Shown piece after piece: positions 26,995-49,786 of a DNA stretch of 64,000 nt. A model generated the notes under the pieces. It did not search any database. It was not told where the DNA came from and saw only the letters and a program-made list of their open reading frames with translations. The position numbers were made by a program, and so were the translations under genes. The stretch lies in NCBI RefSeq assembly GCF_001447785.1, contig NW_015166427.1, positions 823,620 through 887,619 on the forward strand, written 5' to 3'. The DNA is from Gekko japonicus. Taxonomy: Eukaryota. Each line of letters begins with the position of its first letter. Positions within the stretch are counted from its first letter, which is position 1.

Positions 26995-27890
26995 GTTGGT
27001 AGTCTCAATTTGTACAGAATGCTAAATTTCCAACTGTATTGAGTGGATGAATACCTTTTATCTGTCAGAAGACTAGACACTGGTTTTGGTGAACCGGACA
27101 TCTATGTATGGTTGGCAAGCAGGATCATATTTTCTTCTACCTAGGAGAGTGCCACTAGTCCTAACCATGGGGTGACTAGACATCTATACAAAAATCCGAG
27201 GTATACTGACTTAAACCATGGGATGGCAATCCATCATTGTATCTTGCAATTAATTACTCAACGTTTAGCCTGTGTGCTTTGGATTTTTGTGTGTGTGTAT
27301 GTGTGCAAAAAGTATTATGCAAATGAATTTCCTACTCATGGCTGTCTGGCACTAATATATTGTGGAGTGGGCTACTGTTGTCCTACTCTTACGTCACACA
27401 TACACAATAAATGTGTGTGGAGTGGGGAATCAAACCTGGTCCTCCAGATTAGAGTCAGCCACTCTTAACCACTACACCAAACTGGCTCTCTAGTACTGAT
27501 CTAGATGAGCCTGTGGCCTGATCTGCTTTGGCACTAGGGGTTTGAATGCTAAGAGCAACATTTGATAAAAAAGGGTATTTTTTATAGTAGCATTCTTTTT
27601 GTTTACTAATCAGGAAGGCAAAAAAGTATAGCAATTTGTCCATTCTGTTGCTTTACATTTGTCCTTACACAGAAAGCATTTAAAGAGCCTTATCTATCCA
27701 TCTATATGAAGTATTAGCTTTGAAAATACCACTTAACACTATATGAAGATTAATCCCTTTGCAATCTTCAGAGCCTTTTTGCAAATCTGAATTTTTCATT
27801 CAGTCGTCTTATTAGCACTAGTAGAAAATTGCTGTGGCTAGAAACGTAGTAGAACTGGATTTATCGATTACAGCTGTGAAATGTAATGTA

Positions 27891-28175
27891 AGAAGAAGAA
27901 GAAGAGAAGAGATTGGATTTATACCCCACCCTTCACTACCCAAAGGTGTCTCAGAGTGGCTTACAAACTCCTTTTCCTTCCCCTCCCCACAACAGACACC
28001 CTGTGAGGTAGGTGGGGCTGAGAGAGCTCTGACAGAAACTGCTCTTTTTCAAGAACAGCTCTGACAAAACTACAGCTTGCCCAAGGTCATCCAGCCAGGT
28101 GCAAGTGGAGGAGTGGGGAATCAAACCTGGTTCTCCCAGGTTAGAGTCCGCGCACTTAACCACTACACCAAACAG
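27891..28175 (-). mobile_element. tRNA-derived squamate SINE (Squam3/MIR-like)
   Basis: Near-identical to 12026-12303. Shorter or older relatives at about 7790-8000, 27415-27490 and 48860-49035. Confidence 0.75.
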
Positions 28176-29691: not shown

Positions 29692-29871
29692 GAAGAAACA
29701 GAATATATTGAACTTCTAGCAGCAGAAAAGCATCAAGTTGAAGCCCTGAAAAACATGCAGCATCAAAACAAGAGCCTGTCCATTCTTGATGAGATTCTTG
29801 AAGATGTTAGAAAAGCAGCTGATAGGCTGGAAGAGGAAATAGAAGAGCATGCCTTTGATGACAACAAGTCA
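29692..29871 (+). CDS. TMCO3: TMCO3 exon 3
   Basis: taacag|GAAGAA...AAGTCA|gtaagt; [60 protein letters not shown]. Confidence 0.96.
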
Positions 29872-31319
29872 GTAAGTTTACTGAGAGATGGATTTTGTGA
29901 GTTGTTTGGAAATCTATATATCTAATTTCCAACATGGCCCCCTGCGTGCGGATACTTATTTTCGCACATCGGGGGCACCTGGGGGGGAGGGAGATTTTTG
30001 TGCACACACGGGGCAGTCCCCAGGTGTGCACAAAAATCTGTAAACCCGAAAAAAATATTCGGGGGATACTTAAATCCCCCCAAAAGTGACAGAGCGTCCC
30101 CTGCGCATGCGCAGGGAACGCTCTACGAACTCCCTCGCCGTCACTTCGGAGCCGGGGGGATAGAGAGAAGCGAGGCCCGAGTGGCTTGCAGCCGCCACAC
30201 GGGGNNNNNNNNNNNNNNNNNNNNNNNNNNNNNNNNNNNNNNNNNGAAGGGGGGAGATCGAGCGGGGAGGTGTGTGGAGGTGATGGGGGAGGAACCGGCA
30301 GGATGGGGGGGGACTTACCTCCTCCTGCTGCTTCCTCCTCTGCCGCATAAGTGTAGAGTCCCCCCCCCGCGCGGGTATCGCGGGGCCCGCCCCTTGCAGT
30401 ACCTATTTATCAATGTTTTAAAAGTAATTTTATTGACTGGGTAGGTCTAAGTTTTTTAAAAAGTTGAGTAGGATATTTGCAGAAGAAATACACTGGGAAA
30501 GATGAGTGTTTCTTGTAGGGANNNNNNNNNNNNNNNNNNNNNNNNNNNNNNGTAGGGAAATACATCTTGATTATTAAAAGTTACATAGATGGAAAGGAAG
30601 CCAAGAATGCAGTTGAAAGCCTTCTTTCAGAAGTAAGAAGAAAGAGGCAAATGTAGAAGTTAATGCAGCAAAGCTATATGCTTTGAGCTCAGGATTACAG
30701 AACAGCAACATAGAAGACAAGCAAAAGATAAGTCGTTGGCTAGAATATGGTTCACACCAACACAACTGAATTTATTAAAACAATCGTTTAAATAAGGTAC
30801 CTTACTCTGAGCGACTGTGCCAATGCGGTTCTGGCCAAACAGACACCCTTCAGCATTATCTATTCGACAGTGATTTGCTTAATGATGCAAGACACAGTTG
30901 GATAGGACTCTAGGTGTGAACGGGATAATTTGAGGTTTCTTTTAGCAGGGGTGGATTTTAATATTTCATTGGCAGTTGCCAGATTATTTTCTTAGTCGAT
31001 TAAAATTCAAAATCACTAAATTTTACATTATACAGATACATGTATTAAATAAATTTCCTTCTTTTCTTTTTTTAGCCTTAGTGTGACACTGTTCAGAGCC
31101 GAATTGGCTGTAAGAGCAGTACCATTAAAGTTAAAGTAAAACTGAATGATTAAATTGTAGTGGGTTGGAGACACAGTACAGTAAAGATTGGTATTACTAC
31201 AGCTTTAAGTTTCAGAGTAAAGTCCAGTCTAGACATCATGAACTTTTGAAAGCCTTTTCTTCTTTGAAGTGCTGGAACAAAAATAAAAGCAGACTGAGAA
31301 TTCTTTGCTTCCTTCATAG

Positions 31320-31511
31320 GTGAGAGGAGTTAACTTCGAAGCTGTTTTAAGAGTGGAAGAGGATGAAACAGACACAAAAAGAAATATTTCAAAAAGAATA
31401 GTAGAAGATAATTTGGGTCTAAGCATGCTTATTGACTCCCAGAACAACCAGTATATACTTACTAAGCCCAGAGACTCAACCATTCCACGTGCTGATCACC
31501 ATTTTATAAAG
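31320..31511 (+). CDS. TMCO3: TMCO3 exon 4
   Basis: tcatag|GTGAGA...ATAAAG|gtaaat; [16 protein letters not shown]...PRADHHFIK. Confidence 0.96.
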
Positions 31512-32620
31512 GTAAATTGTTATCAAAAGAGCCAAGTACTCACTCTAAGCAACTTTAAAAGGCTTGCATTAAGATTGTAGCTCTGCCTACTTGCTAATGT
31601 TTCAGAAACAGATAAATGGCAGATTGTCTTGTTGTTTTGGAGGTTTTTAATTGATTTTTAGTTAAATGTGTAAAACATACCTGAATCTGTTCTATTTCTC
31701 TGGGATTTAGTGGTAAAATTTGCACGAAATGCTACATGGTTATAATTGCTTCAGGACCCTAATCCCTTCCTGAACATTTTGGGGAGCATCTTTTTAGCTG
31801 TAGGCATGGAAAGCTGTCTCAGACATGACTAAACAATACATTTGGATTTGCCAATGAGTGTATACTTAACTGGAAGATATTGCTTGTTGGTTGTAGCTAT
31901 GCAACAAAGAGATAACTCTACTAACTAGGAAGTCTCCACCATTAAATATATTAACCTTCCACATGGATGTGAAATCTAAGGTCTGATAATAAAAATGGTA
32001 CTGTGTATAACATCTGCATGAAAAAACTTCAGCTTATATCTCCCGGTCAAAAGTGCTGCATAGCCTTCAGTATGAACAAAAAAGCAGGCTTCCCTGCTAT
32101 CTTCAGTTTTGGGTGGTGGAGGATTTATAAGGTTAGTGGAGAGGTCAGCCACAGGGGAGCTCTTGTGTGTGAACAGCTTCTGGGTGAGGCAATGTTTGCC
32201 CAACTGCTACAATAGCTGTGCTTACAGAGCACTGTCGGGCCAGCTCTCACTGGTACTTAACCATGATTTCCAGTATCATTTTTAAATGTTATCACATTTC
32301 AACCATGAAGTTCACCACTCTGTTCACTGATAAAAATATTGTCAAACTAAACCAAGAAAGAATACGATCCACACCTTAAGTGCTCTCACACCATGGGGCT
32401 GCTTGTTCTTCTGAGTGAAATGAGCAAGTTGTGACACCTGTACAGAAGAACTCGCACAATGTGCATGCTTCTCAGGACTGGATAGGCCCAGTAAGTGGTT
32501 GATAGCTGACGGTGTGATCCCATTCTCTATCCAGGATGTATAACTCCTTCATTTACATGTTAACACTGTTTGTACGTATGCATCTGTTGAATGAAATAGT
32601 ATTTTAATTTTATTCATTAG

Positions 32621-32749
32621 GATATTGTGACCATAGGAATGCTATCTTTGCCATGTGGCTGGCTGTGCACAACGATAGGATTGCCTACTATGTTTGGGTA
32701 CATTATTTGTGGAGTCCTTTTGGGACCATCAGGACTGAACAGCATTAAG
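32621..32749 (+). CDS. TMCO3: TMCO3 exon 5
   Basis: cattag|GATATT...ATTAAG|gtaagg; [43 protein letters not shown]. Confidence 0.96.
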
Positions 32750-33090
32750 GTAAGGGAAATATATTTATGGGAGGATTCAGTATTTATAATGTGCATTGAA
32801 CAAATGAGAAAAGAGTGTGTGTGAAAACTAAGCTACTGAAGGATTTAAGTAATAGCATCATATATCAGATTCTATTATTTTTTTACAATTTGGTCTTGTA
32901 CAGTGTGATTGCTATTTCCCCTAAAAATAAATTATTGCTGTATTTCAATGGGAAGTAACTTTAGCTGTATCGTCTTGTTTTACGTAGCAGGGATAAGGTG
33001 GCTTGTTTTTTTCCCCAAGCATAAAATGAAAAACATACCTTGGTAGTTTCAAAACTATAATTGGAAAAAAAATATTGTATGTATTTTGAT

Positions 33091-33416
33091 TAGGGTTGCC
33101 AAGTCGTTACTGTATGCAGAACGGGGGACTCCAGCGCTGCTCTGGGAGTCTGTGTGCAAGCGCTTTGCGCATGCCACATCAGGCATGCCGGGGGCAAGGC
33201 CACAATCATCCGAGGGGAAACCATAGAGTTTTCTCTTAGATGACCCTGCCCTCAACGTGCCCGACGTAACTGCGTCACTTCCAGGTGACATGCTGACGCC
33301 GGGCACGTTGCGTGCTTTGGGGTTGGGGCTCCCCCCGGGGCCCGATCCGCCGCGGGTGGGTAACGGGCCTCTCGGGCGGGGGTTTCCCCGCCCCCCGGGG
33401 GGACTTGGCAAGCCTA
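33091..33416. mobile_element. hAT (Blackjack-like TIR) MITE, CpG-rich
   Basis: TAGGGTTGCCAAGTC...GACTTGGCAAGCCTA; 8-bp TSD ATTTTGAT. Confidence 0.88.
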
Positions 33417-33674
33417 ATTTTGATACCTAACAGGAAAATGTTCATAAGTCAAAAACAAATGTTTAGACAGTTTTCCTGCAGTTCAGAGACTGCTAATATA
33501 TGTATTAAAAAGGCTTCCCTTATGCTCTAGTGAGGATCTAATAATTTAAATGACTGCCAGAGCCCCAGCTCATTCAGAGCTCTGGAGGTGCAGCAGAGCC
33601 TCCTTTTGTGTGCCACGCTCCTGGATCATGGCCTGTTAGTCTTTGTAACAGCCTTTCTGGTAACCTCTTACCAC

Positions 33675-33913
33675 TAGGTTTGCCAGGTCCCTTCTGGCTA
33701 CCAGCAGGGGATTTGGGGGGGGGGTAGGGTTACCAGATCCAGGTTGGGAAACTCCTGCAGCATTGGGGGTGTAGCCTGGGGAGGGCAGGGATCTCAGTGG
33801 GGATCCACCCTCCAAAGCAGCCATTTTTTTCCAGGGAAACTCATCTCTTTAGTCTGGAGATGAGTTGTAATTTTGGGGGATCTCCAGGTCCCACCTGGAT
33901 GCTGGCATCCCTA
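33675..33913. mobile_element. hAT MITE, same family as 3124-3342
   Basis: TAGGTTTGCCAG...CTGGCATCCCTA; interior is the reverse complement of the 3124 copy. Confidence 0.75.
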
Positions 33914-34294
33914 ACTTGCCACACATCCAAAGTTCTTGATACAAGCTTTCCCCCATTATTTTTCTCCTGCATATACTTTACATTGGTTATCTTATTTCCC
34001 ATCTTCTACCACACATCCAGCATGATCAGTTTCATTTTCTCTCTGAAGTAATGCTACTGTTAGTAGCAGTTTGGGTCCTTATCCTGATTATGACCCTTTC
34101 TGTCTATCTTGTTTCTGATATACGAGCACAAGTAAATGTGGCGCCTTGTATTTAACAAGGTGAATAAAATGCACACTGTGGTTGAGATTCTGGGTCTTTT
34201 TAAAATAGAAGTTGATAACAGTACAGTTGGTTGTTCTATGAATCAATAAAAGAAAACTATAGCTTACTGAATAGATGTGCTTTTTCCCCCCCAG

Positions 34295-34387
34295 TCAATC
34301 GTACAGATTGAGACATTGGGAGAGTTTGGTGTATTCTTTACTCTGTTTCTGGTTGGCCTGGAGTTTTCTCCTGAAAGACTAAGAAAG
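34295..34387 (+). CDS. TMCO3: TMCO3 exon 6
   Basis: ccccag|TCAATC...AGAAAG|gtattg; [31 protein letters not shown]. Confidence 0.95.
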
Positions 34388-35114
34388 GTATTGCTCCGTA
34401 ATGTGTATGTTCTTTAACATTACAAATAATTTCTGAACAATAAAACTGCATCTTGGATTTTTCAGGATGTATCTCATTATTTTTGTGTTGCTTAACTAGA
34501 ACTATGAAAGCAAAATGTTTTCTCTCCCCCCCCCTTTTCTTTTCACTCCTAGTCTTTTGGGAGATAAATTAAGAGTTCTTTTAGAATTCATAGATCCTGA
34601 GGTTTAGTTCTTCCTGAAATGGTAAACCTGTTTCCAGTCTGTACCACTTCAGTTGCAGGCAGCGACTGTATTAATATGACGTATTTTTAAAAATCACTAC
34701 ACTTAAACAATAACAAATAACCTAGCAAATCAAGAAGACTTCTCCTGCTATCTACAGTACTATCCTAAGCAGTTCTATTCAGAATCCTACTCAAGGGGAC
34801 TTAACTCCCAGGATAGCGTTCTTATGATTGCACTGTCAGTTTTATGTGTGGAGGTTTTTCTGTGTGTGCATGTATGTGTGTAGAAGAGCAGCTCAGATAC
34901 AGACATATGATCTTGGTTAGAATCAAGCCCAGAGTTCTGTAGACAGGTAAGCAAGCTTTGATTGTAGCCTTGTGTTCTTTGTTTTCACAGTAACATCACT
35001 AGGTTCATTTCTGTACTTGATGCTTCATACTGTGAAGGGGCTAGTGCAGAGTGCTGTGGCTAGACTGCAGGTCAGGCTCAGCTATTGGGACCATGTGACC
35101 CCAATTCTACAGCA

Positions 35115-35480
35115 ATTACACTGGCTACCATTCCACTCCCGTCCAATTTAAGGTGTTGGTTTTGGCCTTTAAAGCCCTAAATGGCTTGGGACAGGGATAT
35201 CTAAAGGACAATCTTCTCCCATATGTTCCTACCCAGGAATTAAGATCACAGGGAGAGGCCCTCCTGAATGTCCTATCAATCAAAGAAGCTTGTTTTTTTT
35301 GGGTACAGGAGGGAGGATCTTGTCAGTGTTAGCCCCATGATTATGGAACAACCTATCCAGGGAGGTGTGCTTCTCCCCCCTCCCCCTTCGATCTTTATGA
35401 GGCAGTTGTAGACAGTTTTACTTAAGACTGCTTTTGACTCTATAAGGAAGAAAGGCAGCTAATAAATATTTTAAATACAT
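35115..35480 (+). mobile_element. Old L2 LINE ORF2 3-prime fragment
   Basis: LHWLP...QFKVLVLAFKALNGLGQGYLKD motifs with frameshifts. Confidence 0.7.
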
Positions 35481-36044
35481 TTAGTAAACAAATACTTTTA
35501 AAGTGGTGTGACAATTCTGAGGCTCTGAGACCCCATCTGTGCACCCAAGCACTTATGTTTGGATCCACATATGTCTTTTCTTCTGTAACAAAGAAATCCA
35601 TATTGTTATATCACTTAAAATACTAATGAATGATTACCAATACCAGGTGATTATAAGTTGGAGGTTAAAATGGAACGACAAGTTAACCACATAATATTCT
35701 AGCTTTTTTGTTGTATACATCCGGTAGATCCTCTGTTACTTCTTTCAGCCTAGTTTTAAACAACATTGAGGGCTGGGTGTGCATAGAAAAGTTTTTGAGC
35801 TCCCAGTGTATTTTAATGTTGATGAAAAAATTTATCACAGAACATTCCCCCCATCCCTTTCTTGATATTCATAGTGTGTAATATATCTAAGGTCTAGAAG
35901 CTCTGACACTGAAAATTTAATTACTCTGAAGAGCTCTTGGTTTTTCTGAATTCTGAATACCATAACTGCATTAAATTTCAGTGTTAAACTGAAAATCATC
36001 AACATGCTAATTGTGCTAGTCTAAGTGAATGTTTATTCTCAAAG

Positions 36045-36231
36045 GTATGGAAGATATCATTGCAAGGACCCTGTTACATGACTTTGCTGATGATTGCATT
36101 TGGCTTACTGTGGGGACAATTCCTACAAATTAGAGCAACTCAGAGTGTTTTCATTGCTACTTGTTTATCATTATCAAGCACACCATTAGTATCCAGATTC
36201 CTAGCAGGGAGTTCTCGAGGAGATAAGGAAG
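36045..36231 (+). CDS. TMCO3: TMCO3 exon 7
   Basis: tcaaag|GTATGG...GAAG|gtgagt; [20 protein letters not shown]...[20 protein letters not shown]. Confidence 0.96.
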
Positions 36232-36336
36232 GTGAGTGCACCTTTACTTCTGAATTAGAATATTTATTGCAAACTGAGTGTACACATATAAGAGCTAGAA
36301 CAATTAGCTTAAAAGAAAGTGTGTCTTTGGTTATAG

Positions 36337-36529
36337 TGCTGGTTTTCAAAGTGGGCAATATCGCCCCCTCGGGGGCGCTGGAATGATCCAGGTGGGCTGG
36401 AACGATCCAGGTGCAGATCCACAAACTGCATCTTTTTGTCCACTTCTTGAAGGTAGATTTCCAGGGGGGCACTGAGTAATTTTTTTTCTGAAAATGGGTC
36501 GGTAGGCCAAATAAGTTTGGGAACCTCTG
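36337..36529. mobile_element. hAT-Charlie-like MITE
   Basis: Ends GTTTGGGAACCTCTG; 8-bp TSD GGTTATAG on both sides. Confidence 0.75.
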
Positions 36530-38203
36530 GGTTATAGAAAGGTACTCTTAACCAAGCAGTTAACTTTAGGTTAAGTAACTGACAATTTTGAACATAGGTG
36601 ATTTGGGGTTCAGGCTACTTTAGCCCTGAATGTTACAAAATCTAATCTTTTCAGCCCAGTTGGGCAAATGCCTCTCATTCCATGTATAAACTGGAGATAA
36701 GACTTTTGACAACCCATGGCTGTGTTGTGCCCATGGGGGTCTCTCTCCAAGGCTTAGTGGCTGTCCTCCACATATGCAATACCACTTCCAGGCTTTTCTT
36801 CCTCTCTGAACTGATGAGGCATGTAACGCTGTTTCTGCCTCTGCATTAAAAAAACCAAACTAAAACAACGATAATACCATCTGTGAACTACTTTTTCGGG
36901 AGATTCCTTGACCTTGGATTGTCAGTTAACATCACTTGAGTTAACAAGACCTTGGCTGCTAGTTTGTCTGATCATGGAATTACCTTGTTGCATTTTCTGT
37001 GATACAAAAATGACTATCCAGTGGTATTTAGGGCCCAAGTTCTTGAAGGATATGTGGTTTAGCTGCAAGCTAATTATAAAACAAATATCAAAGTTTGGCG
37101 GTTAAGAAGCTATGGCATGCCCATGGGTTTCTCTGTGGGCCAGTGGCTGTTCTTCAGGTAGTAGTACAGCTGCCTACCACTCTGCCAGGTGGACACAGAC
37201 ACCTCCTGGTCCCTCTTCCTCTAATTCCAAACCTCGGGTACCAGTTGAAGAGGAATAGATGTTGCAAATACATTGAGCAAAATGAAGATCTTCAAGGAAG
37301 AACAAAAGAGTTCATTGGAAGAGAAGCAGGAAGGGGAGGTTTGTTTGGAGGAGAAACACACAGCAAGAATTCAAAGCAAAGAACTTGATGTACTGCTAGT
37401 TCTACTTCCCTGGCCAGTTGCATTCATGTTAGTCTGTAGATCTCAGAAGCTAGGAGGAAATGGCTATAGAGGACTGTCAGGTATGTGTGTGGGAACCCCC
37501 CCCCCTGTTTTTTATGTAATTCAAGTACATAGAAGTTACCTTGGAGCTGGGACCAGAGATCAGGTCCTAGGGTATGGATGCAAGCATCGCTTTTCCCATG
37601 ATACAGTTTGTACATCTTAAGAGTCCTACACATCACTGATGTCTGGAAGTGAAATTGAAAGCAGTCTTTGTGGGACTCAGTCTATAACATCTTGCAACTC
37701 AAGTTTGTTTTCCGACAGTTAAAACGGCATGTTGCCATTCCTACCTTCACACTAGTGAGAGTTTCATTAGTAGAATGAAGAAGAGCTTCACACATGTTGC
37801 TAGGAGAGCTTCCGGATTCCGCCAAGAACTCATCCCAGCTGCTTGTTCAGGGACTGAACAGGTTTTATTTACACATATACGAGTTGGGCTGAAAGGTCCT
37901 AACTGCAACAACTCCACCTGCTATCTTAACAACCACAATACAGCTGCTTCTTCCCAGACACCTCCAGGAGGCAGAGAGCTTTGCTTTCAGATATTAACTC
38001 TTTTCTTAACTGTTCCATTCTTCATAACTCTTTACCCCAGTACACAGTTACTTGGCATTGGTTAAACTAACTTTCTATGAGCAGCTGATCATTAATTTTA
38101 ATAGACTGCTCAGTCTTCAGTAAGCGTTGATCCTTATTGATGAAGTATTGCTGTTGAATCTGTACCTATGTACTAGTTTAATTTTTGGTTGTCTTTTAAA
38201 CAG

Positions 38204-38321
38204 GTGATATTGATTATAGCAGCGTTTTACTTGGGATGTTGATAATGCAGGATGTACAGCTTGGCTTATTTATAGCTGTCATGCCAACGCTTATTCAAGC
38301 TGGAGTTGGTACACATTCCAG
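38204..38321 (+). CDS. TMCO3: TMCO3 exon 8
   Basis: aaacag|GTGAT...TCCAG|gtaaca; [39 protein letters not shown]. Confidence 0.95.
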
Positions 38322-38794
38322 GTAACAAAATTAATCTGTGTGTTTTTATTTCACTTTTCTTTTATCCTGTCTGTCCTCCGAAGATTCTAGGGCAGTACAC
38401 ACAATGATTTTATTTTGCTGTACTAAAGCACTTTCCAGCTTTTAAAATGTGCTTTTAAGCATTTTAACCAATATCCACTGTATGGTGTATACTCGCTGCT
38501 TTTGTGACAGCAATCCAGAGATGTGCTTGCATTACAGCCGCTAAATGTATTGGGAGTTTGACAGTGAGATTCTAACCAGAGTTTAACACCCATTTAAGCT
38601 CAGATGTAAATGGATTTGGAAGGGTGTAACTCTGTTTAGGATTGCATTGTTAGTCAGTTTCCTATTCACCATAATCCTAACCCTACTCCCTCTGCACTGC
38701 AGCCCCTTCAGTTTAGCATGAACATTCCTGAGTACAGGTTGACCAAGAAACTGGTGCATACAACCATTTGTGTGTGTGTGTGTGTGTGTGTATA

Positions 38795-39066
38795 GCCCTG
38801 ACCTGGATAGCCCAGGCTAGCCCAATCTCGTCAGACCTAACCCTGACTAGTATATGGATGGGGGACCTCGAAGGAATACCAGGGGTGTGATACAGAGCTA
38901 GGCCATGGCAAAACCACCTCTGAAATGTCTCTTGCCTTAAAAACAAGTCTAGCTCACCACCTAGTGGTGCATAATACTAATAGCGCTGGAACATTTGGCT
39001 GCCAGGCAATCTTAGGATCTCCTCGCTATACTATACAAACTGGCATATGATAATTATTAATTATTG
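38795..39066 (+). mobile_element. 5S-derived SINE with alternative (TTA)n-ending tail
   Basis: Reverse complement of 877-1168, including the head/tail junction CTTGCCTTAAAAACAAGTCTAGCTCACCACCTAGTGG. Confidence 0.75.
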
Positions 39067-39519
39067 TACATATTAAGGCATCACTCTGGATTATAGCTGG
39101 CATTGTGGTTAAATACAATCAAATAAACAGCATGTTGCAATTGAAATGTTAATTTGTTAGAACATCAGGTTTAAAAATGTTTAAATAGTTAATTGCTATA
39201 AACATTTCAGTACTCCCACTATAAACTAGAGTAAAACAGTTGAGCCTGATTCATTGGACTTATATCCTGCTTTATGTGCTTGGAGCAGCTGACAGCAGTC
39301 TTCATGCAAATAAAAATGTGTTTCTCAGGACTACATTCTCAACTGGTTTTTGAAGCTGAGCATTCTGTGACCTTTTAAACAAAGCTATAGTTGGAAGCTG
39401 TAAATACTAATATGGATTCATGCACACTTTGCTTTTTAATAATATAAATTTTAAAATTGCAAGAAGAAATCATTTTAGAATTAAGAGACTGAAACTGAAT
39501 TTTTTCCCCTCTTTTGCAG

Positions 39520-39753
39520 CATTATCCAGGAAATACTGAGAATATTGACACTGGTTGGACAAATTCTCTTTTCTTTGGCTGCTGTCTTCTTCATGTGTCT
39601 TGTTTTAAAGACTTATCTAATAGGACCATACTACCGCAAGTTGCACGTGGAAAGCAAAGGAAATAAAGAAATCCTAGTTCTAGGAATATCTGCTTTTAAG
39701 ATTTATTAGATGTTTCAATGGAACTGGGCGCTTTTATGTTTTTTATGTTAATG
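39520..39753 (+). CDS. TMCO3: TMCO3 exon 9 (contains a 38-nt frameshifting insertion at 39699-39736)
   Basis: ttgcag|CATTATC...TTAATG|gtaatc; [22 protein letters not shown]...[11 protein letters not shown][insert]MFFMLM. Length is 196 nt without the insert. As assembled there is an in-frame TAG at 39707-39709. Confidence 0.9.
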
Positions 39754-42287
39754 GTAATCTTTCTAAATTTTCATATTTATTAAAATGTACATGGAGTACT
39801 TTTTCATGGGGAAAGGTAGCGTTTGGCCACTAGATATGGGTTTATTGGTGAAAAGAAAACCAGATTTTCTTGTTTGGCTTGTAAAGACTCCTAAATTGGT
39901 ACTATCAATAAATCTAATTTACAGAGCCCTAATATTAACTCTCTAAAACTGAATGTGTTAATTGTGCGTTAGAAACAGAGAAGTGGCTATTATGAATGGG
40001 GGAGCATCCCACCCACCCTTCTAAAATCTTCATGTTGCTCTGTCCGTAGTCGTCTACCCAACAGCAATTATCTGGTGCATTTTGTTTTTAAAGCTTTTGT
40101 GGTTTTAAAAAGCTACTTGTGCTAATAACAGCAAGAGATGCTACAACATCTGAGCTCATGGCTGGGTTGTCCATTTGATCAGGTTTCGAAAATGATCATA
40201 AAATCACTGTAGCGTTGTAAGAGGCTCTCTGTGTGCACACGTGCATACATCCCTATGTATTATAAAATGTATACATTGTTAGTCTTACGGCATGTAAAAG
40301 ACTGGTCTGTTTATTGTGGAATAAGCAGTTATTGGCTAGAGACCACTTCATCAGTTGAGGGGCCTAACAGTGCAATCCTGTGCCATGCCAAATCTAAGCC
40401 CACTGAAATTAGCAAGATCAGATTCTGCGTAAATTCACTGTATGTTACAGAAGAGGGCCTGGCTCAGTGGTATGGTACCTGCTTTGCACACAGAATGTCC
40501 CGGGTTCAGACTCGGGCATCTCCCGCTAAGAGATCTCGGGTAGCAAACTCAAACAAAAACTACATCAAAAGGCCAAGCCAAGTGCGAGCCACCGAAGTGT
40601 TGTGTAATATTCAAGGCACAAATAAATGCAGGATCCAGTTAATATGGATGTGGCCCTTACCTGATTAGTGCCCACTGTTAATGATTGGGCATAGCAAGAT
40701 GAATAGTGGAAAGAATTACTTAGAGGGACAATTGCTTTCGGCAGTGAGCTAACTATACCCAGTATAAAATTAGCTGTCTCGGTTTCCTGTCTCTTAAAAC
40801 CCCTTTTTTCTGTAGTGTTTTGATCTCAAAATCCATTACACAACATCTTGGGGAACTGAAATAGTCATCCATTGATTTCTTCGTATTACCATTTCTAATG
40901 AGTAGTTGCTTCAGTTCAGAGGAGCTGATGTGGTCTAGACATGTTAATAGCAAAGTGGAAATCATCAGTTTAAAAGATAGATTTTTCTCAAGGATGCCCT
41001 TTGGGAATAGGAGTTACAGGGTAGGTCGAGGAAGAAAATAACTGAATGCTACTTGTAACCCAGCTGCTCTTGGCTAAAACCACTCCAGCCTATAAGGGTC
41101 AAGGACCTATAGCACGTCCTGAAAAATGATTTGTTCCCTCTCCAAACGTTGGCTAAATGCCTCCTTTTGTTTAAATTAACATGAGTCTAGAGGAACCATA
41201 AAGACTAACAATATTTTATTCCAGCATTAACTTTTTTGGACTGTTCTTCCTCTGCTGCCCTGGAAACAATGGCTACCAAATGGAAATTAAAACCTAGGGA
41301 CTAGTCCCTACACAAAACCCACTATCAGTGCTGTCTCTGTTGCTTCTGTAAAGTGTTGTGTGTGCAGCCATTTCATTAAGAGCTCATTCAACTGGATATC
41401 TTCTAACATGATGAAAGTTATTATTAGCCAACAGTGTTTTTCGTTTGTTTACATAGCCCAATGAGATTAGTTTTTCCTATAAGGACATAAATGGACACAA
41501 TAATTAAAAATGGGAAAACTCAGAAACCAGTAAGGGTTTTTTTCTCTGTGTCTCCTGTGATATTCTGTAGCAACAGGCTTTAAGGAAAATGTACTTCACC
41601 ATAAAATAACTTCAAAGCATAGTCTGACATGAACCAAGCAAAATTGGAATTTATCAGCAAATTTGCCACTCTTAGACTTGGCCTTACGATTGCTTTCTAT
41701 AGTAAGCTATTATCTCTTTAAGGATTTATGTTGACTGTTCATCTTTTGGTAGTTCATAGCCAGCATACCCAGCTTAATTAGATCTTTCAGTCTTTTGTGT
41801 TCTTCATAATCATTTTGTAAAAATGTTGTAAAGAAACTCCCTTCTCTGTGCACTTGTGGTACTACAAATACACCCTGTGTCACATGACCTTTGAATGCAA
41901 GTCGTTTCTAAGCCTAGAAATCTTTTAATTCTTCCTTTGCTCCGAAATAGAAATCAGATTGGAGATTTTACCTCTTTTCTTAGAAGATACAGCAGAGCTA
42001 TGATTTTTAGCTGCGATTTAAGTATGCAAAATCTTATGTATCTGTGATAGATTTTCACAGCCGTCTGAATGGGGTCTAGCTTTTTCTACACTTTAGTAAT
42101 CTGTTTAGAACTAGTAAATTAAGAAGTAGCATGAGGTAGATCTAAAGATATAACTACATACCGAGAGGTAAGCATTTCTTGCGTCTGCTGAAGTATGTCT
42201 GGCCCATGAAAGCTTACTCTACAATAGCCTCTAAGGTACCTTATATAAATGTGTTCACAATCCAGGTTTGTTTCTCATTGTTGCAAC

Positions 42288-42464
42288 TAGAGCTGTCAAC
42301 TGCCTGGAGAAAAAAAGCCTTTTAATAGAGGCTTAACGGCATGTTATTTACCAGGTTATGTTATTTATCTCCTTGCCATAGAAAGTTTCAGAACCTCAAT
42401 TTCTATACATTAAGCCTGTCTTAAAGGGACAGGACATTTTTCTTGAGCCCTGTTGGTAACTGTA
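42288..42464. mobile_element. hAT MITE (degenerate TIRs)
   Basis: 8-bp TSD GTTGCAAC; related copy at about 50371-50555. Confidence 0.65.
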
Positions 42465-43143
42465 GTTGCAACATAGGGCATTTTATAATTCGTAAAGAGA
42501 TTAGAATTTTTAGAAGCCTTAACAGAATTGGATCACTTCATATGCCTATATAGCATCATGCTTTCTTTTCTACATTGTAATTATTAAAACCCTAATAAGG
42601 AAGCAACTTTTTACATTAAATGAAGTAGACTTTCTTTCCAACAGGGGTAGCCATGTTAGTCTGTTACAAAGACTAAATAGCAGAGGGGTTTTGTTTTGTG
42701 GCACCACAAAGTTATTGTGGCACAAGCTTTTGCAGAACCAGAGCTCACTTTTTCAAATGCATGAAGTGTGGACCTCAGTGGGCAGAAGTATATACATAGA
42801 TAGCTACAAAGATAAAAAGAATGGGGAATGGGAAGAAGTACTGTGAAATAAGGTGTATTACATTACCATGCAGAGAATGAATGAAAGCCAGATCCAATGA
42901 GTGAATGATTCAGTTAGACTAGAACACTCCCAACAGGTGATAAACTGACCAGATAAGGGGATCAGTGTTTCTGAAGAGACGATAGCTTTCTACAGTGAAC
43001 TGAACACCCTAGTCTCTATGCTTTCTGTAAGATTTAAGTATGCAAAATTTAAGTATAACCTTGCATTTTCATGCAAGGAATTCATTGAAGCAAGTTACCA
43101 TTCAGAAAACTATCATCTCTTTTTGTTTCCTCTCTCCAAACAG

Positions 43144-43294
43144 ATTACAGATTTATTAGATGTTTCAATGGAACTGGGATGCTTTCTTTCAGGAGCACTT
43201 ATTTCTTCTCAGGGTCACATGGTTACTGAAGAGATCATGTCCTGCATTGAACCAATACGTGACTTCCTTGCCATCATATTCTTTGCATCAATTG
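43144..43294 (+). CDS. TMCO3: TMCO3 exon 10
   Basis: aaacag|ATTACA...ATTG|gtaatt; [50 protein letters not shown]. Confidence 0.96.
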
Positions 43295-43955
43295 GTAATT
43301 GTCACAGTAATGCATACAAACGATGTTTAATTTCACTAGTTTACCAGGCAAAGAAGAAAGAGGGCATCTTCTGTATTTTGCTGGTGAAGCAGAGCACCTT
43401 GGTAGCAGTGGAATCAGGTGTTGTGATGGCACAAAATGTTCGTGAACATTGTAGTTGCTCAGGGAACAAAGAACTGAGGGCCATTAAGCATGTTTTTCTT
43501 GAATAGGAGCCCCCCTTGACTTATGGCAAATTGCTTTTGAAACAAAAAGGATATTCCAGATCAGTTTGTGATATGCTTGGGGAGAAGCTGATAAAAGAAA
43601 AAGGAGTACAAAAAACCCCACCAACTACTATTTTGAGTCTGACAGAATCTTCGGTGTCTGCTTCTCTGAGAGAACAGAATGCTGTCAGTTTGGTTAAAAT
43701 ATCATGCAGGTCCTAGAGACAGGAGTAGCCTTGTGGGGTGTGAGGGGTAGAAAGAGGCCCGGAAGGTAGGGGAACTAAGAGGGCATGGTGCTGAAGAAGG
43801 ACAAGGTGGTTGGATATGGGGGGGGGGGAGGCAAAGTAGGTAATGGATTGGGGGGGGAACTGGAGGACAATAATACTAGCACGTTATGTCTTCAACTGGT
43901 TGTAGTATTGTTTTAAGTGTTTTAATCGTTTTTATTGTTATTTATGCATTGTTTT

Positions 43956-44298
43956 GGGAGCTGCGGTGGCTCAAGTGGTTAAGACGCTGAACTGCAGGCT
44001 GTGGACGGTCAGTAGTTCAGCAGTTCGAGACCCGAGTGTGCCGCATGACGGAGTGAGCTCCCATCTCTAGTTCCAGCTCCTGCCAACCTAGCAGTTCGAA
44101 AGCAAGAAATTGCAAGTAGATAAATAGGTACCACTTCAGTGGGAAGGTAACAGCGTTCCGTGCACCTTGGTGTTTAGTCATGCCGGCCACATGACCACAG
44201 AAACGTCTTCGGACAGCACTGGCTCTTCGGCTTTGAAACGGAGATTCAACCCTAGAGTTGGATTCGACTGGCTTTCAAGCAAGGGAACCTTTACCTTT
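43956..44298 (+). mobile_element. Full-length Sauria SINE inserted in an L2-type tail
   Basis: tRNA-like head GGTGGCTCAAGTGGTTAAGACG, core CCTAGCAGTTCGAAAGC..GTAGATAAATAGGTACCAC, ACCTTT tail, TSD TTTATGCATTGTTTT. Confidence 0.88.
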
Positions 44299-45246
44299 AT
44301 GCATTGTTTTATGTAAGCGAACCTTTATCTTTACCTTTATGCATTGTTTTATGTAAGCCGCCCTGAGCCAGCTTCGGCTGGAAAGGCGGGGTAGAAATCT
44401 GATCAAATAAATAAATAAATAAATAAAATGCTTTGAGGAAGAGAGGGTACATGAACTTGATCAGGAGACTATTTCATATGTTGAACTGGCTGTGTTAGTT
44501 GCAGGCTCCTAGTGTCCTTTAAAGCTGTAATTTTAAGCACAGCTATTTAGAAATGGATATTTGTAACTTAAATTTTAAATACATTTTGGATTTGGGTGGA
44601 AATGTAACCAGTAACCAGTTATGATGGCTTGGCTCCTAACTACTTACCGGTGAGAGTCAAGTCCATGGATTAGGATTTCCTAGCCTCTCCCTAGCTGCTG
44701 CTTCCCACTGAAATTTTGCTCCTGGGTGTAAAGAGATCTTAAACACTAGCTATTTACTAAGTTACAAATTCTAGAGTCAGTAGAAACTGGGGAGGTACCG
44801 TTTCATGTTCATCAAACAAAAGCAAATTAGTTAACAGACACTCCTGTAACTAGCTGTATGTGTCCCAAGGGGTTTAAAATCTCCTCCCTCCTTAAAAGCA
44901 GCTCTGTTGTGCTCTGTAACTTTCTGAAATTGATAAGAACTGTTCAAACAATTCACAGTATGACATAAAGGTCACCTGCTCAAAGAAAAATGTAGAAACA
45001 TCCACTTTATGTCTCCTTTATCGGGACCACTCACAAGGTTCGCCGTATGTGTAGGACCTTGTAAGACCAGGATTCTGGTCATGTTTTGTTTAGTGGTGTG
45101 GGACCTGAGATTATCAGATATTTTGGTCCTGCCATTCACAAGAATGGACCAAAGTATAGAACTGGCAAATATCTAACTCAAATGGCTAGGCTTGAGCACA
45201 GCCTGAAAGGGGGGAAAATAACTTCCAGAGTTTGTGATATGCATAA

Positions 45247-45465
45247 AAAAGGTAAAGGTTCCCTTGCTCGAAAGCCAGTCGAATCCGACTCTAGGGTTGC
45301 GGTGCTCATCTCCGTTTCAAAGCCGAAGAGCCAGCGCTGTCCGAAGACGTTTCCGTGGTCATGTGGCCGGCATGACTAAACACCAAGGCGCGCGGAACGC
45401 TGTTACCTTCCCACCAAAGTGGTACCTATTTATCTACTTGCAATTTCTTGCTTTCGAACTGCTAG
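45247..45465 (-). mobile_element. 5-prime-truncated Sauria SINE
   Basis: AAAGGTAAAGGTTCCC tail and reverse core; ATGCATAAA flanks both sides. Confidence 0.85.
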
Positions 45466-47422
45466 ATATAGATGCATAAAGTAGGTTGAATCCTAAAGCT
45501 CCCTTCCACTTGCATCAGATTTCTGCTGATTTCCCCTCCCCCTTTCTCGAGCATGCACCCTGCAGTTTCCTAGTGTCCACCAGTCCACAGGGGCAGGGTT
45601 TTAGGGCATATAGCAGGCTATAGTGGGAAGCAAAAGCCAGAAAAATTCTTCTGTACGAGCACCTCTTGGAATCTATCTCATTATCACCTAGGAAGTATTT
45701 ATCAAACCTTCATTTACTTTGTTGCCAGTGAACATGTCAAAACAGGTTTCCAGCCTAGGGAGTGGAGCTGTGCCTTTGCCATATGTAGATTTCCCCCAGG
45801 TCTGATCAGGTCCAGTCCTCTTATCCTGCCCAGGGCCAGGGCAGCTCCTCTTCCTGGTCCCCCCCCCTTTACCTGTGCCTTCTCAGGCTTTCCCAGCAAG
45901 CTTACCTTCCTCTCTTTCTACTTTCTCCTGAGAACTCCATGCTGGTCAGGTTTGCATGAGGCTGGCCACAGCCCCCAGCTTCTCCCCAACCAAAGGAACT
46001 CTGCCCCCCCCACTCCCCGACACTGCCCTCAGCATCTAATTGGTGTGGGGAAGGCTGTCCTGTGGGTGGTGCAGCCCTGCTCTTACTGGGACCATCATGC
46101 TGCCGCCGCCATTCCAGGTGGTATCCTGCCCCTTCTTGGAGTAGCTGTTGCATTTGGCCCAGTGGGTCAGGCCTCCTGTGTCCTCTGCTGCTGTGCTGTC
46201 GTCTTGCCACATTACATATTAGTCTGCAGTTCCATGTGTGCTTACCTGGGAATAAGGGGGAAAGTATCAGGCTGCAACTGTGTCATAGTCACTCTAGACA
46301 AAATCAATTATCCCACATTTATTTAAATTCTATCCCACTTCATCTCAATAAATAATATATATCTGACTATATTAAAGTACATAAACTTACGCTACTGTGA
46401 CCAGAAAACTGAGGGTATAAAAAATGCTTCCACCCAAGAATTCACCTCAGTGTTTCAGTTATTGTGACTGTTCTCTGTCCATAGCCCTGCTGGCAGAAGG
46501 GAGGGGGGTTGGAGATAGGAGCCACTGCTCTCCCAGCACTCAAGCTTTTAGTTATGCTAATGGATAACTGTATCATCCCCTGCTAGTAAGTCACACCTTG
46601 AACCATAAAGCTGGAAAGACTAAAGTGATAGAAGGAGAACTCTTCCTTTGGGACAGAAAGGGCATCCCAAAAGTGTGTGTGGGGGGAGAGAACTTATAAG
46701 AACTTTGGACATAAGGAAGAGGGGTTTCTTCCATTTTGGGCAGCTCTTAAGATGGGCTCAAGCCATGGTGAACAAAGCTTCCACCAAGGATCTCCATCTT
46801 TTCCGTGATTGCAGGGGACAGTGGAGAGGAGTAATGATGAACTTGTACTGCAACTTAAAGCAAAGTTTGCCTGTCTTAAATCGGACATCATTAAGGAAGT
46901 ACTTATAGAAGGGAGAGAGGACAGTGTGTTTTCACCATTTCTTTGTTCCCTTGCTAAGCCCAAACATAACGTGTATTCTTTCATTAACTTGTTAAACTTC
47001 CTTATATTTTGAACCATCTGGAAACTCACTGTTCCTATTTAGTCCTGCATTCTGAAATGTGGTAACAGGGAGGGGCAGCAGAGAAGTTTACCATCCCTGG
47101 AGCACAATAGCTTTAACAGGCAAAGTTGTGATGAATTCTGTATACTTGTACAAATGTTGTGGGAGGCAGGGCAACTAGGCAGCACAGGTACAGAGTGTTA
47201 GATGTATGACTCTGTCTGGCAGGAGATACTCCCAAGAGTCATTAATGGTTACTCAGTTTGTAACTGGCACCATTGAGGAGCAAGGGGAAAGGGTGCACTG
47301 CCAAAGAGAGACTTGAAGCAGATGTAGGGTTCTTCTTACTTCTGAGGGTCCAATCAGGAGGAACAGGGAAGGGCTTCACAGAGGAACAGAAATTGAAATG
47401 AGCTTCTCATTCTTTTACATAG

Positions 47423-47595
47423 CAGTAAAAAGCCCAGTAGCAACTTTAGGACTAACAAACTTTATTGTAGCATCAGCTTTCGAGAAACATAGCCCTCGTT
47501 GTCAGATGCACCTAGCGATGAGGGCTGTGTTTCTCGAAAGCTTATCCTGCAATAACATTTGTTAGTCTTAAAGATGCTACTGGGCTTTTTACTAT
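47423..47595. mobile_element. Penelope-like inverted terminal pair (about 170-bp palindrome)
   Basis: AGTAAAAAGCCCAGTAGCA...CTTTCGAGAAACA / TGTTTCTCGAAAG...TGCTACTGGGCTTTTTACT; each arm has a degenerate CTGANGA..GAAAGCT core. Confidence 0.65.
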
Positions 47596-49213
47596 TTTGC
47601 AGCCACACAGCTAACTCCTGGATCTATTCTTTTACATGTTGACTTTGTTCCTTGGTTATGTGGAATATTCAAACATGGTATGTTCAAATGTAAATTATTT
47701 TTATCTCACTTGATGCAGAAGATGGAAAAATCTAAGGCCGCAAGAAACAAGAGGAATCAAATACTGTGTGGTATAAAGGCCTTTTGCCATCCACTGTTGC
47801 AGGAGCTCATGTGCTTGGCAACTTCCCAGAGTGCAGTCCTGAAGCAAATATCTAAAATATTATTTATTCTGCCACTTAATTTTTTTTTTGCCAACGTCAT
47901 ATCCTTGAGTGTTGGTGGTTTAATAAACCAATGAAGTGTAATAGCAGTCATCACTAAGAAGGCTTTGAATCTTGGGTCAGATACTTTATTTAGGCGTGAT
48001 GCTGGCAAGGCAAAATAACTTACCTATGGGACTTCATGCTCCCATGCAGTTTAATTTAAACCAGGGCTGCTGCCACCTATTCAAAACAGCTCTGGTGCTT
48101 AGTTTAAAATATCAGCACAATACCCACCTGGGCTACCAGTCTCTGGAGTGCTTTTTGAGCAGGTAAAGTTGCTTTTGCATGGATGGCAGCCCAGTTTAAA
48201 TGAAAGTCACAAGGTTAATTGCTTTTTCCCCATTAGCATCATGTTTAAATCAAGCCTTGAGGTTTACAGCAATGTGAACTGGCTATAACAATACTATTTT
48301 TAATAGGGCTGAGTTCAGATTGGGTGGGCTAATGTTTTTGTTCCGAGTGAAAATTTGTTGTTGATATTTGGTGGAGAGTCAGGATGGTTATAAATAAGCC
48401 CAAAGAACTCATTCAGTGTCTCTTCAGGGTAAAGGCAATGGTTTCTGCCTTCACTTTAACTTTACTTAGATGCTGTTAGATAACCAAACATGATTGGTTG
48501 CATGGTGCTTAATGCCCACATGCATATATTGACCACAAAACATTTGGCCCTGAAGCAACAGAATGAGGAATTTAGCAGGTGCCTATAGTATAGGCTGTAA
48601 ACAAGATGAATATCAGTAAGTTGTACCTCAGAAAACATTTCGTCTTTCCTCACATACCTTCTTTCTGTACTGAACATGCAAAAATACAAAAAAATGTTTT
48701 ATTTAACTGCCCTAATTTTAGAACACCACTGTATTTCATTCACTATTTTGAAAGATGAAAATATTTAATACGATTTTTTACCCTGCCCCCAGCTCCATTT
48801 TCTAGTTTTTCTACTTCAGGCCTCAGGCCCCTGTATTTTCCCCTTGGCATTTGCATCTTGGTTAGAGTGCTGGACTGGACTGAGATTCAAATACCTGCAT
48901 TGAAGCTAGCTAGGTGACCTTGGGTCAGTCATACACTCTTAGCCTAACTTACCTCACAGAGTTGTGAGGATCAAATGAAGGAAAGGAGAATGGTATAAGC
49001 TGCTTTGGATCCCCAGTAGGGATTGGCAGGGTATAATTATGTAGCATAATTTTAATTATGTAGCATAATGAAGCCATCAAAATCTTGTGACGCGCTAGGC
49101 TTTTTATTTGACACAAATAACATTTCATCATTACATTCTTATATACTTTAATACTTAAAAGACAAAACTAAAGTAAAAGAACTGTTTCTTCCCACCCCTC
49201 CTTTCTCTTGCAG

Positions 49214-49293
49214 GTCTTCACGTTTTTCCTACATTTGTCATTTATGAACTCACAGTCCTGCTGTTCCTTACATTTTCAGTTGTAATAATGAAG
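49214..49293 (+). CDS. TMCO3: TMCO3 exon 11
   Basis: ttgcag|GTCTTCAC...ATGAAG|gtatac; [27 protein letters not shown]. Confidence 0.95.
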
Positions 49294-49390
49294 GTATACT
49301 TTTAAACATCTTATAATACAACTAAATGTTAAATGTAAAATTGAGGTATCATGTTATCAGGTGGGTAGCCATGTTGGTCCAAAGCATATG

Positions 49391-49786
49391 TAGGGCTGCC
49401 AGACTCCCCCCATTGGAGGCGGGGGTCCCCTGCTGACAGGCTTCACCTCCTCACTGCCGATCAACTGGCCAGTGGGAGGGGGGACTTACCACGAAAAAGA
49501 GGGAGATCCACCTGATGTACACCGACGTGTCTACATCACTGCCCACATGACCCGGAAGTGACATCATCACATCCGGGACATTGGGGTGACACTGGTATTT
49601 GGGCAAAACTCTGTGGTAGAAGCCAAATTTACCATAGAGTTTTTGCCCAAGTACCAGAGCATCACCCCAACATGATGTCACTTCCGGGTCACATTGGCAG
49701 TGACGTAGACATGTTGCTGTATGTCAAGTGGGCCTCCCTACTAGTCTGGGTAAGTCCCCCCTGCCCTGCTGGACCTGGCAACCCTA
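49391..49786. mobile_element. hAT MITE with long internal inverted repeat
   Basis: TAGGGCTGCCAG...CTGGCAACCCTA; internal palindrome at about 49525-49715; relative at about 53143-53478. Confidence 0.75.

What the first reader, a model, noticed from the sequence alone, without database searches (positions are those of the whole stretch)
39692..39736. TMCO3 exon 9 carries a templated copy of exon 10, creating a premature stop
Seen: AGATTTATTAGATGTTTCAATGGAACTGGG (39699-39728) is an exact 30-nt copy of 43149-43178 in exon 10. It is followed by C and a repeat of GCTTTTA (39692-39698 and 39730-39736). Removing these 38 nt restores SAFMFFMLM|[12 protein letters not shown] and the reading frame. As assembled there is TAG at 39707-39709, truncating the antiporter domain. 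Donor and insertion site are 3.4 kb apart in DNA but only 22 nt apart in the spliced mRNA, and both carry TGCTTT microhomology. Inference: this is either an mRNA-templated insertion (a loss-of-function allele resembling polymerase-theta templated insertions) or mis-polishing by junction-spanning RNA reads. All other exons are intact, so if real it is very recent.
Basis: partly seen in the sequence, partly recalled or inferred. Interest (0 to 1): 0.8.

Follow-up and report, generated by a model that had tools for sequence, protein, structure and literature searches.

The report
Assembly chimera in gecko TMCO3 exon
The 38 extra letters that break this gecko ion-transporter gene are most likely an error of the short-read genome assembly, which spliced in a scrap of a second, intron-less copy of the gene, so the finding is ordinary.

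Summary
Positions 39699-39728 copy 43149-43178 exactly, a GCTTTTA heptamer flanks the copy, and a TAG falls in the exon frame. The other 11 coding exons are intact.

The insertion is probably not real. Two DNA data sets and two unspliced RNA reads from other animals of the same species skip exactly 39691-39728 and read ATATC|CGCTTTTATG. Seventeen RNA reads show the normal exon 9-10 splice.

The left junction (GCTTTTA|AGATTT) does occur in both DNA data sets. There it runs on into exon 10 with no intron, and no RNA read shows it. The same DNA data hold a spliced exon 8/9 junction and a frameshifting extra T in exon 9 that RNA lacks. This points to a decaying intron-less second copy, a processed pseudogene.

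The assembly appears to string the pseudogene branch (T + GCTTTTA + 30-mer) and then the true branch (C + GCTTTTA...) one after the other. This accounts for every letter, including the "extra C".

A second spliced fragment, TFDP1 exon 2 plus the start of exon 3, sits 19 kb away at 58242-58372.

The reference animal's own reads were not available, so a private real allele is not excluded (about 10%).

The parts
39520..39753 (+). TMCO3-like exon '9' (8th coding exon) as assembled, 234 nt; 196 nt without the surplus
   Evidence: AG at 39518-39519 and GT at 39754-39755. RNA reads join 38321 to 39520 (joint 38318->39517 with cut +3). Frame checked.
39691..39728 (+). The 38 surplus letters: T, GCTTTTA, then the 30-mer. 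Read as the branch of an intron-less second copy strung into the exon.
   Evidence: Contigs of X1 (depth 75.3) and X2 (36.2) and 2 raw RNA reads of X24 skip exactly these letters, with 0 ambiguous letters (table 5).
39699..39728 (+). Exact 30-nt copy of the start of exon 10 (from its 6th letter)
39707..39709 (+). TAG in the exon-9 frame
39729..39753 (+). True continuation of exon 9 (C GCTTTTA TG...AATG). The C is the native letter of codon TCC (Ser).
   Evidence: The skip joint lands on 39729 with both=0. Translation.
43144..43294 (+). Exon 10. It matches Na_H_Exchanger profile positions 223-270.
43149..43178 (+). Original of the 30-mer
26548..54562 (+). TMCO3-like gene, 12 coding exons: 26548-26994, 29692-29871, 31317-31511, 32621-32749, 34295-34387, 36045-36231, 38204-38321, 39520-39753, 43144-43294, 49214-49293, about 51472-51621, 54449-54562. 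Borders are approximate to a few nt where codons are split.
58242..58372 (+). Second case: 131 nt of spliced TFDP1-like message (exon 2 plus the first 43 nt of the next exon, which lies outside the window) standing about 2.1 kb upstream of the real exon 2
60398..60483 (+). Real TFDP1-like exon 2, bounded by ag and gt, holding the start codon

Best explanation
The 38 letters are an assembly chimera, not a mutation. The species carries the real TMCO3 gene and also a second, intron-less, decaying copy (a processed pseudogene). Within exon 9 the two copies are identical up to ...ATATC. The real gene then goes on C-GCTTTTA-TGTTTT... to the exon end and intron 9. The second copy goes on T-GCTTTTA and straight into exon 10 at its 6th letter; it lacks 22 nt around the exon 9/10 junction. 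A short-read graph assembler meets a fork at that letter. The draft followed the pseudogene branch for 38 letters, up to the point where that branch merges with the real exon 10 path. Scaffolding or local gap filling then butted the true branch on behind it. The result is two copies of GCTTTTA, a 30-nt 'copy of exon 10', and a false stop codon. Shown here: the native allele, the fork, the exon 9-to-exon 10 DNA contig, and the normal mRNA. Inferred: that the second copy is a retrocopy, and which assembler step made the join.
For: 1. Native form. X1 and X2 (DNA, with introns covered at depth about 65 over all 5.3 kb) each hold one contig that skips 39691-39728 with no ambiguity. Two unspliced RNA reads of X24 do the same and reach at least 44 letters beyond the joint, i.e. 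into intron 9 (table 5).
2. Normal mRNA. 17 X24 reads join ...GCTTTTA + 16 letters (TGTTTTTTATGTTAAT) to 43143, which is the normal exon 9-10 splice without the insert (table 5c).
3. The fork. A second contig in X1 (depth 51.5) and X2 (47.5) joins 39698 to 43149 with 30 letters fitting either side and 38 letters on the short side. That is 30 + 8, as expected for a 31-mer contig that starts at a variant letter at 39691. The native contig has 30 letters on its short side, i.e. the same start. In X2 the total depth at 43188 equals this contig's depth (47.5), so the contig runs on well into exon 10 and not into CGCTTTTA.
4. Second copy. X1 DNA holds a contig with the spliced exon 8/9 junction (GT..AG, depth 67.5). 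An extra T after 39599, which shifts the frame, is in 71.9 of 138.9 depth in X1 and 83.7 of 121.2 in X2, but in 0 of 62 RNA reads. No RNA read shows the 39698->43149 joint.
5. Depths. C branch plus T branch give 127 in X1 against about 65 for single-copy sequence, so these are two loci and not two alleles.
6. Economy. Every letter is explained, including T at 39691 and C at 39729.
7. None of 20 holder runs from 10 studies has half of the sampled words of 39560-39860.
8. A second spliced fragment lies 19 kb away, about 340 nt before an N gap.
9. The gene is otherwise intact, and relatives' genomic ORFs read [11 protein letters not shown] uninterrupted.
10. If the earlier notes are right about the species, the assembly is Illumina-only: SOAPdenovo 29-mers, then SSPACE, then local gap filling. 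The SOAPdenovo authors list mishandled look-alike contigs and wrong choices by the gap closer among similar repeats as known faults.
Against: - The reads of the reference animal itself were not among the runs served, so the absence of the right junction (39728|39729) in its DNA is not shown.
- X1-X3 were seen only as Logan contigs, which show presence and not absence, and their label 'DNA?' is a guess.
- The contig between 39600 and 39690 has depth 80 in X1, not the roughly 130 expected if two loci share it.
- A retrocopy should have an exact exon 9/10 junction. This one lacks 22 nt just there, which needs a further event.
- The 30-nt length equals k-1 for k=31, but the paper reports 29-mers for contig building, and the k of the gap filler is unknown.
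- The pseudogene locus itself was not seen.
Confidence: 0.78

Rival explanations
1. A real insertion, private to the sequenced male or rare. A break in exon 9 was repaired by copying a short patch from the intron-less second copy, from the gene's own spliced transcript, or from exon 10 in cis by polymerase-theta-type template switching. This would give a loss-of-function allele.
For: The structure looks like a templated insertion: an exact copy of nearby sequence, a GCTTT motif at both sites, and a repeated heptamer. The rest of the gene is intact, as expected for a very young allele. The reference animal's reads were not examined.
Against: Annealing at TGCTTT predicts ...GGGATGCTTTTATG at the right junction, but the assembly has ...GGGCGCTTTTATG. 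That is a blunt join to the native letter C with no shared letters, as a concatenation would give. A second spliced fragment in the neighbouring gene makes two independent rare repair events in 19 kb unlikely. No other data set shows the insertion.
Confidence: 0.12
2. RNA-seq or cDNA reads entered assembly, gap closing or polishing, and junction-spanning reads were forced into the exon.
For: Both odd fragments in the window (TMCO3 and TFDP1) consist of spliced sequence.
Against: The joined form GCTTTTA|AGATTT is in 0 RNA reads of X24, where 17 reads show the normal junction, but it is in both DNA runs at genome-like depth. The published method uses genomic libraries for assembly and RNA only for checking and annotation. 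A normal mRNA read cannot supply that junction.
Confidence: 0.04
3. The insertion is a common allele, and X1 and X2 are heterozygous for it.
For: Both runs hold the left junction, with T at 39691, beside the native form.
Against: The branch depths add up to about twice the single-copy depth in X1. The contig with the left junction continues in exon 10, not in CGCTTTTA. In X2 its depth equals the whole depth at 43188.
Confidence: 0.03

Closest known systems
False duplications and chimeric joins in short-read de Bruijn-graph assemblies (Ko et al. 2022, PMC9516828; faults listed for SOAPdenovo scaffolding and GapCloser, PMC3626529)
   Same: Two alternative branches of near-identical sequence are laid one behind the other. 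The result is a small false duplication that breaks a gene model in a draft with N gaps.
   Different: Here the second branch is not the other haplotype but a paralogous, intron-less copy, so the false piece looks like a copy of the next exon.
Retrocopy (processed pseudogene) signature in whole-genome reads: exon-exon junctions seen in DNA at the parent gene (PMC9435743, PMC10267823, PMC9694029)
   Same: DNA data hold a spliced exon 8/9 junction and an exon 9-to-exon 10 join without the intron, at genome-like depth. A frameshift is present that is absent from RNA.
   Different: The insertion site, poly-A tail and target-site duplication of the retrocopy were not seen. Its exon 9/10 junction lacks 22 nt.
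Polymerase-theta / MMBIR templated insertions (PMC7165422, PMC8421209)
   Same: A short exact copy of nearby sequence inserted at a site that shares a few letters with the template.
   Different: The right junction shows no use of the shared letters. The insertion is absent from all other data. Presence in genomic DNA of the reference animal is not shown.
Transcript-RNA-templated break repair
   Same: The source and target are 22 nt apart only in the spliced message.
   Different: That process is expected to copy the message faithfully, giving precise intron loss. It would not place a displaced 30-nt piece with a duplicated heptamer. No evidence here that the event happened in DNA.

Membership tests
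Assembly artefact (chimeric join / false duplication) | Independent data of the same species lack the feature at this locus | tested here: met
   X1 and X2 contigs and 2 X24 reads skip 39691-39728. 17 RNA reads show the normal splice. No run holds half of the words.
Assembly artefact (chimeric join / false duplication) | The surplus piece is explained by a look-alike sequence elsewhere that forks from the true path exactly at its start | tested here: met
   Fork at 39691: native contig side=30, other contig side=38, both=30, and the latter goes on in exon 10.
Assembly artefact (chimeric join / false duplication) | The reads of the assembled individual do not span the false junction | not testable with these tools
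   No served run holds the stretch.
Assembly artefact (chimeric join / false duplication) | The assembly method is prone to it (short reads, graph assembler, gap filling) | tested here: inconclusive
   Six N runs of 23-328 nt in the window. The species and assembly are named only by earlier AI notes. The paper for that assembly reports SOAPdenovo 29-mers, SSPACE and local gap filling.
Processed pseudogene (retrocopy) of TMCO3 | Exon-exon junctions present in genomic DNA | tested here: met
   Exon 8/9 GT..AG joint in X1, depth 67.5. Exon 9->10 joint in X1 and X2.
Processed pseudogene (retrocopy) of TMCO3 | Disabling changes absent from the mRNA | tested here: met
   Extra T after 39599 in about half of the DNA depth and 0 of 62 RNA reads. 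The 22-nt loss at the 9/10 junction is in 0 RNA reads.
Processed pseudogene (retrocopy) of TMCO3 | Own genomic site with poly-A tail and target-site duplication | not testable with these tools
Polymerase-theta templated insertion | Insertion present in genomic DNA molecules | tested here: not met
   Absent in the two DNA runs laid; the right junction was seen nowhere. The reference animal was not tested.
Polymerase-theta templated insertion | Microhomology used at the junctions | tested here: not met
   Right junction GGG|CGCTTTTA shares no letter with the template continuation GGG|ATGCTTTC at the join. The left junction A|A has at most 0-1 shared letters.
TMCO3 (CPA2-type cation/proton antiporter with N-terminal coiled coil) | Na_H_Exchanger domain spread in order over the exons | tested here: met
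   PF00999 hits at profile positions 2-37, 40-67, 67-125, 223-270 and 296-353 in successive exons. Weak KefC match in the PDB.
TMCO3 (CPA2-type cation/proton antiporter with N-terminal coiled coil) | Orthology to human TMCO3 | not tested
   The name rests on my memory of the human protein and of the DCUN1D2-TMCO3-TFDP1 gene order.

The most novel reading that the evidence does not exclude
The sequenced male really carries the 38-nt patch in one TMCO3 allele, copied during break repair from the gene's own retrocopy or spliced transcript. This would be a germline example in a vertebrate of repair templated by an RNA-derived copy, and TFDP1 next door would be a second example.
Probability: 0.1. 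Interest if true: 0.65.

Novelty: not a real feature. Interest (0 to 1): 0.12.

Why it matters
If it were real, this would be a very young null allele of a conserved antiporter made by transcript- or retrocopy-templated repair, which is rare and mechanistically interesting. As an artefact it matters only practically. The gene should not be scored as lost or truncated in this gecko. Intron-less gene copies can plant pieces of 'the next exon' into parent exons of short-read drafts. A scan for exact exon fragments displaced within their own gene, as here and at TFDP1, would flag such errors across this assembly.

Tried and rejected
- **k-mer size.** I took the exact 30-nt length as k-1 for k=31 and hoped the assembler's k would match. 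The paper's supplement says 29-mers for contigs. The argument survives only for an unknown k in the gap-filling step, so I do not lean on it.
- **Exon/intron depth ratios.** I considered these as proof of an extra copy and dropped them. Bin depths sum overlapping contigs and are inflated in intron bins too (table 2). Only per-contig depths at forks were used.
- **Word search with the exon-9 ORF.** It found only genomic ORFs of other species (best 92% identity, all without the insert). There was no ORF ending in ...SAFKIY, and nothing from this species.
- **ESM Atlas with the first coding exon.** No usable hit.
- **PDB.** Only a weak KefC match for exon 10 and none for exon 9.
- **Earlier notes.** No note on a TMCO3 retrocopy in this genome.
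- **Paper search.** One search timed out.
- **Alternative splicing as the source of the exon 9->10 DNA joint.** Rejected: the skipped part starts TG and ends AC, and no RNA read shows it.

Full report
**What is in the sequence**

- 39699-39728 equals 43149-43178 letter for letter. These are the only two matches in the window even with three mismatches allowed, and none of 100 shuffles gave a match.
- The copy is preceded by GCTTTTA (39692-39698) and followed by C and GCTTTTA again (39729-39736).
- The exon frame reads ...[14 protein letters not shown] and stops at TAG 39707-39709.
- Without 38 letters the exon reads ...[12 protein letters not shown] and joins in phase to [12 protein letters not shown]... 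of the next exon.
- The donor and the insertion site are 3450 nt apart in DNA and 22 nt (17 + 5) apart in the spliced message.

**The gene**

- On the + strand there are 12 coding exons from 26548 (ATG) to 54562 (stop). All have AG/GT borders and a continuous frame apart from this exon.
- Successive exons match the Pfam sodium/hydrogen-exchanger domain in order, at profile positions 2-37, 40-67, 67-125, 223-270 and 296-353. Exon 10 has a weak match to KefC in the PDB.
- The name TMCO3 and the gene order rest on my own knowledge. A DCUN1D2-like gene lies on the minus strand near 11.7 kb, and a TFDP1-like gene starts near 58 kb.
- I searched exons one at a time by reference and sent no joined model to any search tool.

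**Reads**

It found 20 holder runs from 10 studies, and none had half of the words. The best were two DNA runs of 'organism A' at 0.48.

I laid X1 and X2 (DNA, Logan contigs), X3 (low-coverage, uninformative here) and X24 (raw RNA reads, same species label) on 38100-43400.

1. **Native form.** X1 (depth 75.3) and X2 (36.2) each have a contig that skips 38 letters, from 39690 to 39729, with zero letters that fit on either side. Two X24 reads do the same, with at least 44 letters on the shorter side, so they are unspliced and reach intron 9. The zero ambiguity means these molecules read ATATC then CGCTTTTATG. The native codon is TCC. The C at 39729 is the gene's own letter, and the surplus is 39691-39728 (T, GCTTTTA, 30-mer).
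2. **Normal mRNA.** Seventeen X24 reads run to 39698, then carry TGTTTTTTATGTTAAT, then continue at 43143. This is the normal exon 9-10 junction without the insert.
3. **The fork.** A second contig in X1 (51.5) and X2 (47.5) joins 39698 to 43149, with 30 letters that fit either side and 38 on the shorter side.
   - Logan works with 31-mers, so a contig that starts at a variant letter carries 30 shared letters before it.
   - The native contig has 30 letters before its joint at 39690|39729. This one has 30 + 8 before 39698. Both therefore start at 39661 and part at 39691, one with C and one with T.
   - The T contig goes on into exon 10. In X2 the total depth at 43188 is 47.5, which is this contig's own depth.
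   - No RNA read shows this joint.
4. **Spliced junction in DNA.** X1 holds a contig with the exon 8/9 junction (GT..AG) at depth 67.5, the depth of single-copy DNA in that run (introns 64-67).
5. **Frameshift in DNA only.** An extra T behind 39599, which would shift the frame, is carried by 71.9 of 138.9 depth in X1 and 83.7 of 121.2 in X2, and by 0 of 62 RNA reads.

**Reading**

Points 3-5 describe a second copy of the gene in DNA. It lacks introns 8 and 9, carries a frameshift and a 22-nt loss at the exon 9/10 junction, and is not seen in RNA.
- In X1 the C and T branches add to about 127 against about 65 for single-copy sequence, so these are two loci and not two alleles.
- This is the usual signature of a processed pseudogene in whole-genome reads (PMC9435743, PMC10267823, PMC9694029).
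- The retrocopy nature is inferred. Its own locus, tail and flanks were not seen.

Set against this fork, the assembled text is simply: shared exon 9 up to ATATC, then the whole T branch up to the last letter it has before it merges with the real exon 10 path (38 letters), then the C branch from its first letter.
- Nothing is left over. The T, the repeated heptamer, the 30-mer and the 'extra C' all follow.
- A templated repair event using the TGCTTT motif would instead give ...GGGATGCTTTTATG at the right side. The assembly has a blunt ...GGG|CGCTTTTATG.

**Second case**

- 58242-58329 is identical to 60397-60484. That stretch is the TFDP1-like exon 2, bounded by ag and gt and holding ATG GCA AAA GAT.
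- The copy runs on for 43 more letters that code for ...AGLIEANGELKVFI. This is the next exon, which lies outside the window.
- So 131 nt of spliced message stand about 2.1 kb upstream of the real exon 2, about 340 nt before an N gap.
- Two such fragments in neighbouring genes fit a systematic fault of the assembly far better than two rare repair events. I could not lay reads there.

**Assembly method**

- Earlier notes call this genome a Japanese-gecko short-read draft. I did not verify that. The window has six N runs of 23-328 nt.
- The paper on that assembly reports one adult male and Illumina libraries only. It used SOAPdenovo 2.04 with 29-mers, then SSPACE, then local assembly with read pairs to fill gaps. 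RNA-seq served only for checking and annotation.
- The SOAPdenovo2 paper names mishandled look-alike contigs, chimeric scaffolds and wrong choices of the gap closer between highly similar repeats as known faults. False duplications in older vertebrate assemblies are well documented (PMC9516828).
- Which step made this join is inferred.

**Other support**

Genomic ORFs of related species found by the word search read [11 protein letters not shown] (or close variants) straight into the intron, with no insert.

**What does not fit or is open**

- The reference animal's own reads were not available, so the absence of the right junction in its DNA is not shown.
- Contigs show presence, not absence.
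- The contig 39600-39690 has depth 80 in X1, where two loci sharing it should give about 130. A filter may have removed records.
- The loss of 22 nt exactly at the exon 9/10 junction of the second copy needs its own event.
- 30 = k-1 holds for k = 31, not for the 29-mers reported.

**Verdict**

- Observation: confirmed.
- Interpretation as a real mRNA-templated null allele: unlikely, about 0.1.
- Artefact: likely, about 0.8, but via DNA reads of an intron-less copy rather than RNA reads.
- Interest: low.

Noticed in passing
window 58242-58372 (source exon 2 at 60398-60483): 131 nt of spliced TFDP1-like message (exon 2 plus 43 nt of the next exon, which is not in the window) stand next to the gene's first exon, about 340 nt before the N gap 58716-59043. 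This is probably the same kind of assembly fault. The native start of intron 1 may be missing at the join 58372|58373.
   Followed up: partly
window 39520-39698 and 43149 onward, as seen in runs X1 and X2: DNA runs of the species hold an intron-less TMCO3 copy. It shows a spliced exon 8/9 junction, an extra T after 39599, T at the 39691 equivalent, and exon 9 joined to exon 10 with 22 nt missing. None of these are seen in RNA. It is likely a processed pseudogene whose locus is elsewhere in the genome.
   Followed up: partly
window 43188: The assembly has T (CTT, Leu). All 44 RNA reads of X24 and one X1 contig have A (CTA, Leu). The contig joined to the pseudogene branch has T. This is either a plain synonymous polymorphism or a sign that part of assembled exon 10 also follows the second copy.
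   Followed up: no
window 39009-39559 (intron 8): X1 and X2 differ from the assembly at 14-15 places in about 550 nt (about 2.5%), far more than in neighbouring introns (0-1%). Among them are three adjacent T>C changes at 39503-39505.
   Followed up: no
window 14188-14755: Two tandem copies of a 284-nt unit, 97% alike.
   Followed up: no
window 11635-11859, minus strand: An ORF piece that looks like a DCN1-like (DCUN1D2) exon. Together with the TMCO3-like and TFDP1-like genes this matches the human 13q34 gene order as I remember it.
   Followed up: no
window 12028-12320 and 27890-28180: Two copies, 90-93% alike, of a SINE-like repeat with a tRNA-like GGGGAATCAAACCTGG box. Further copies lie at 7934 and 27419.
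   Followed up: no
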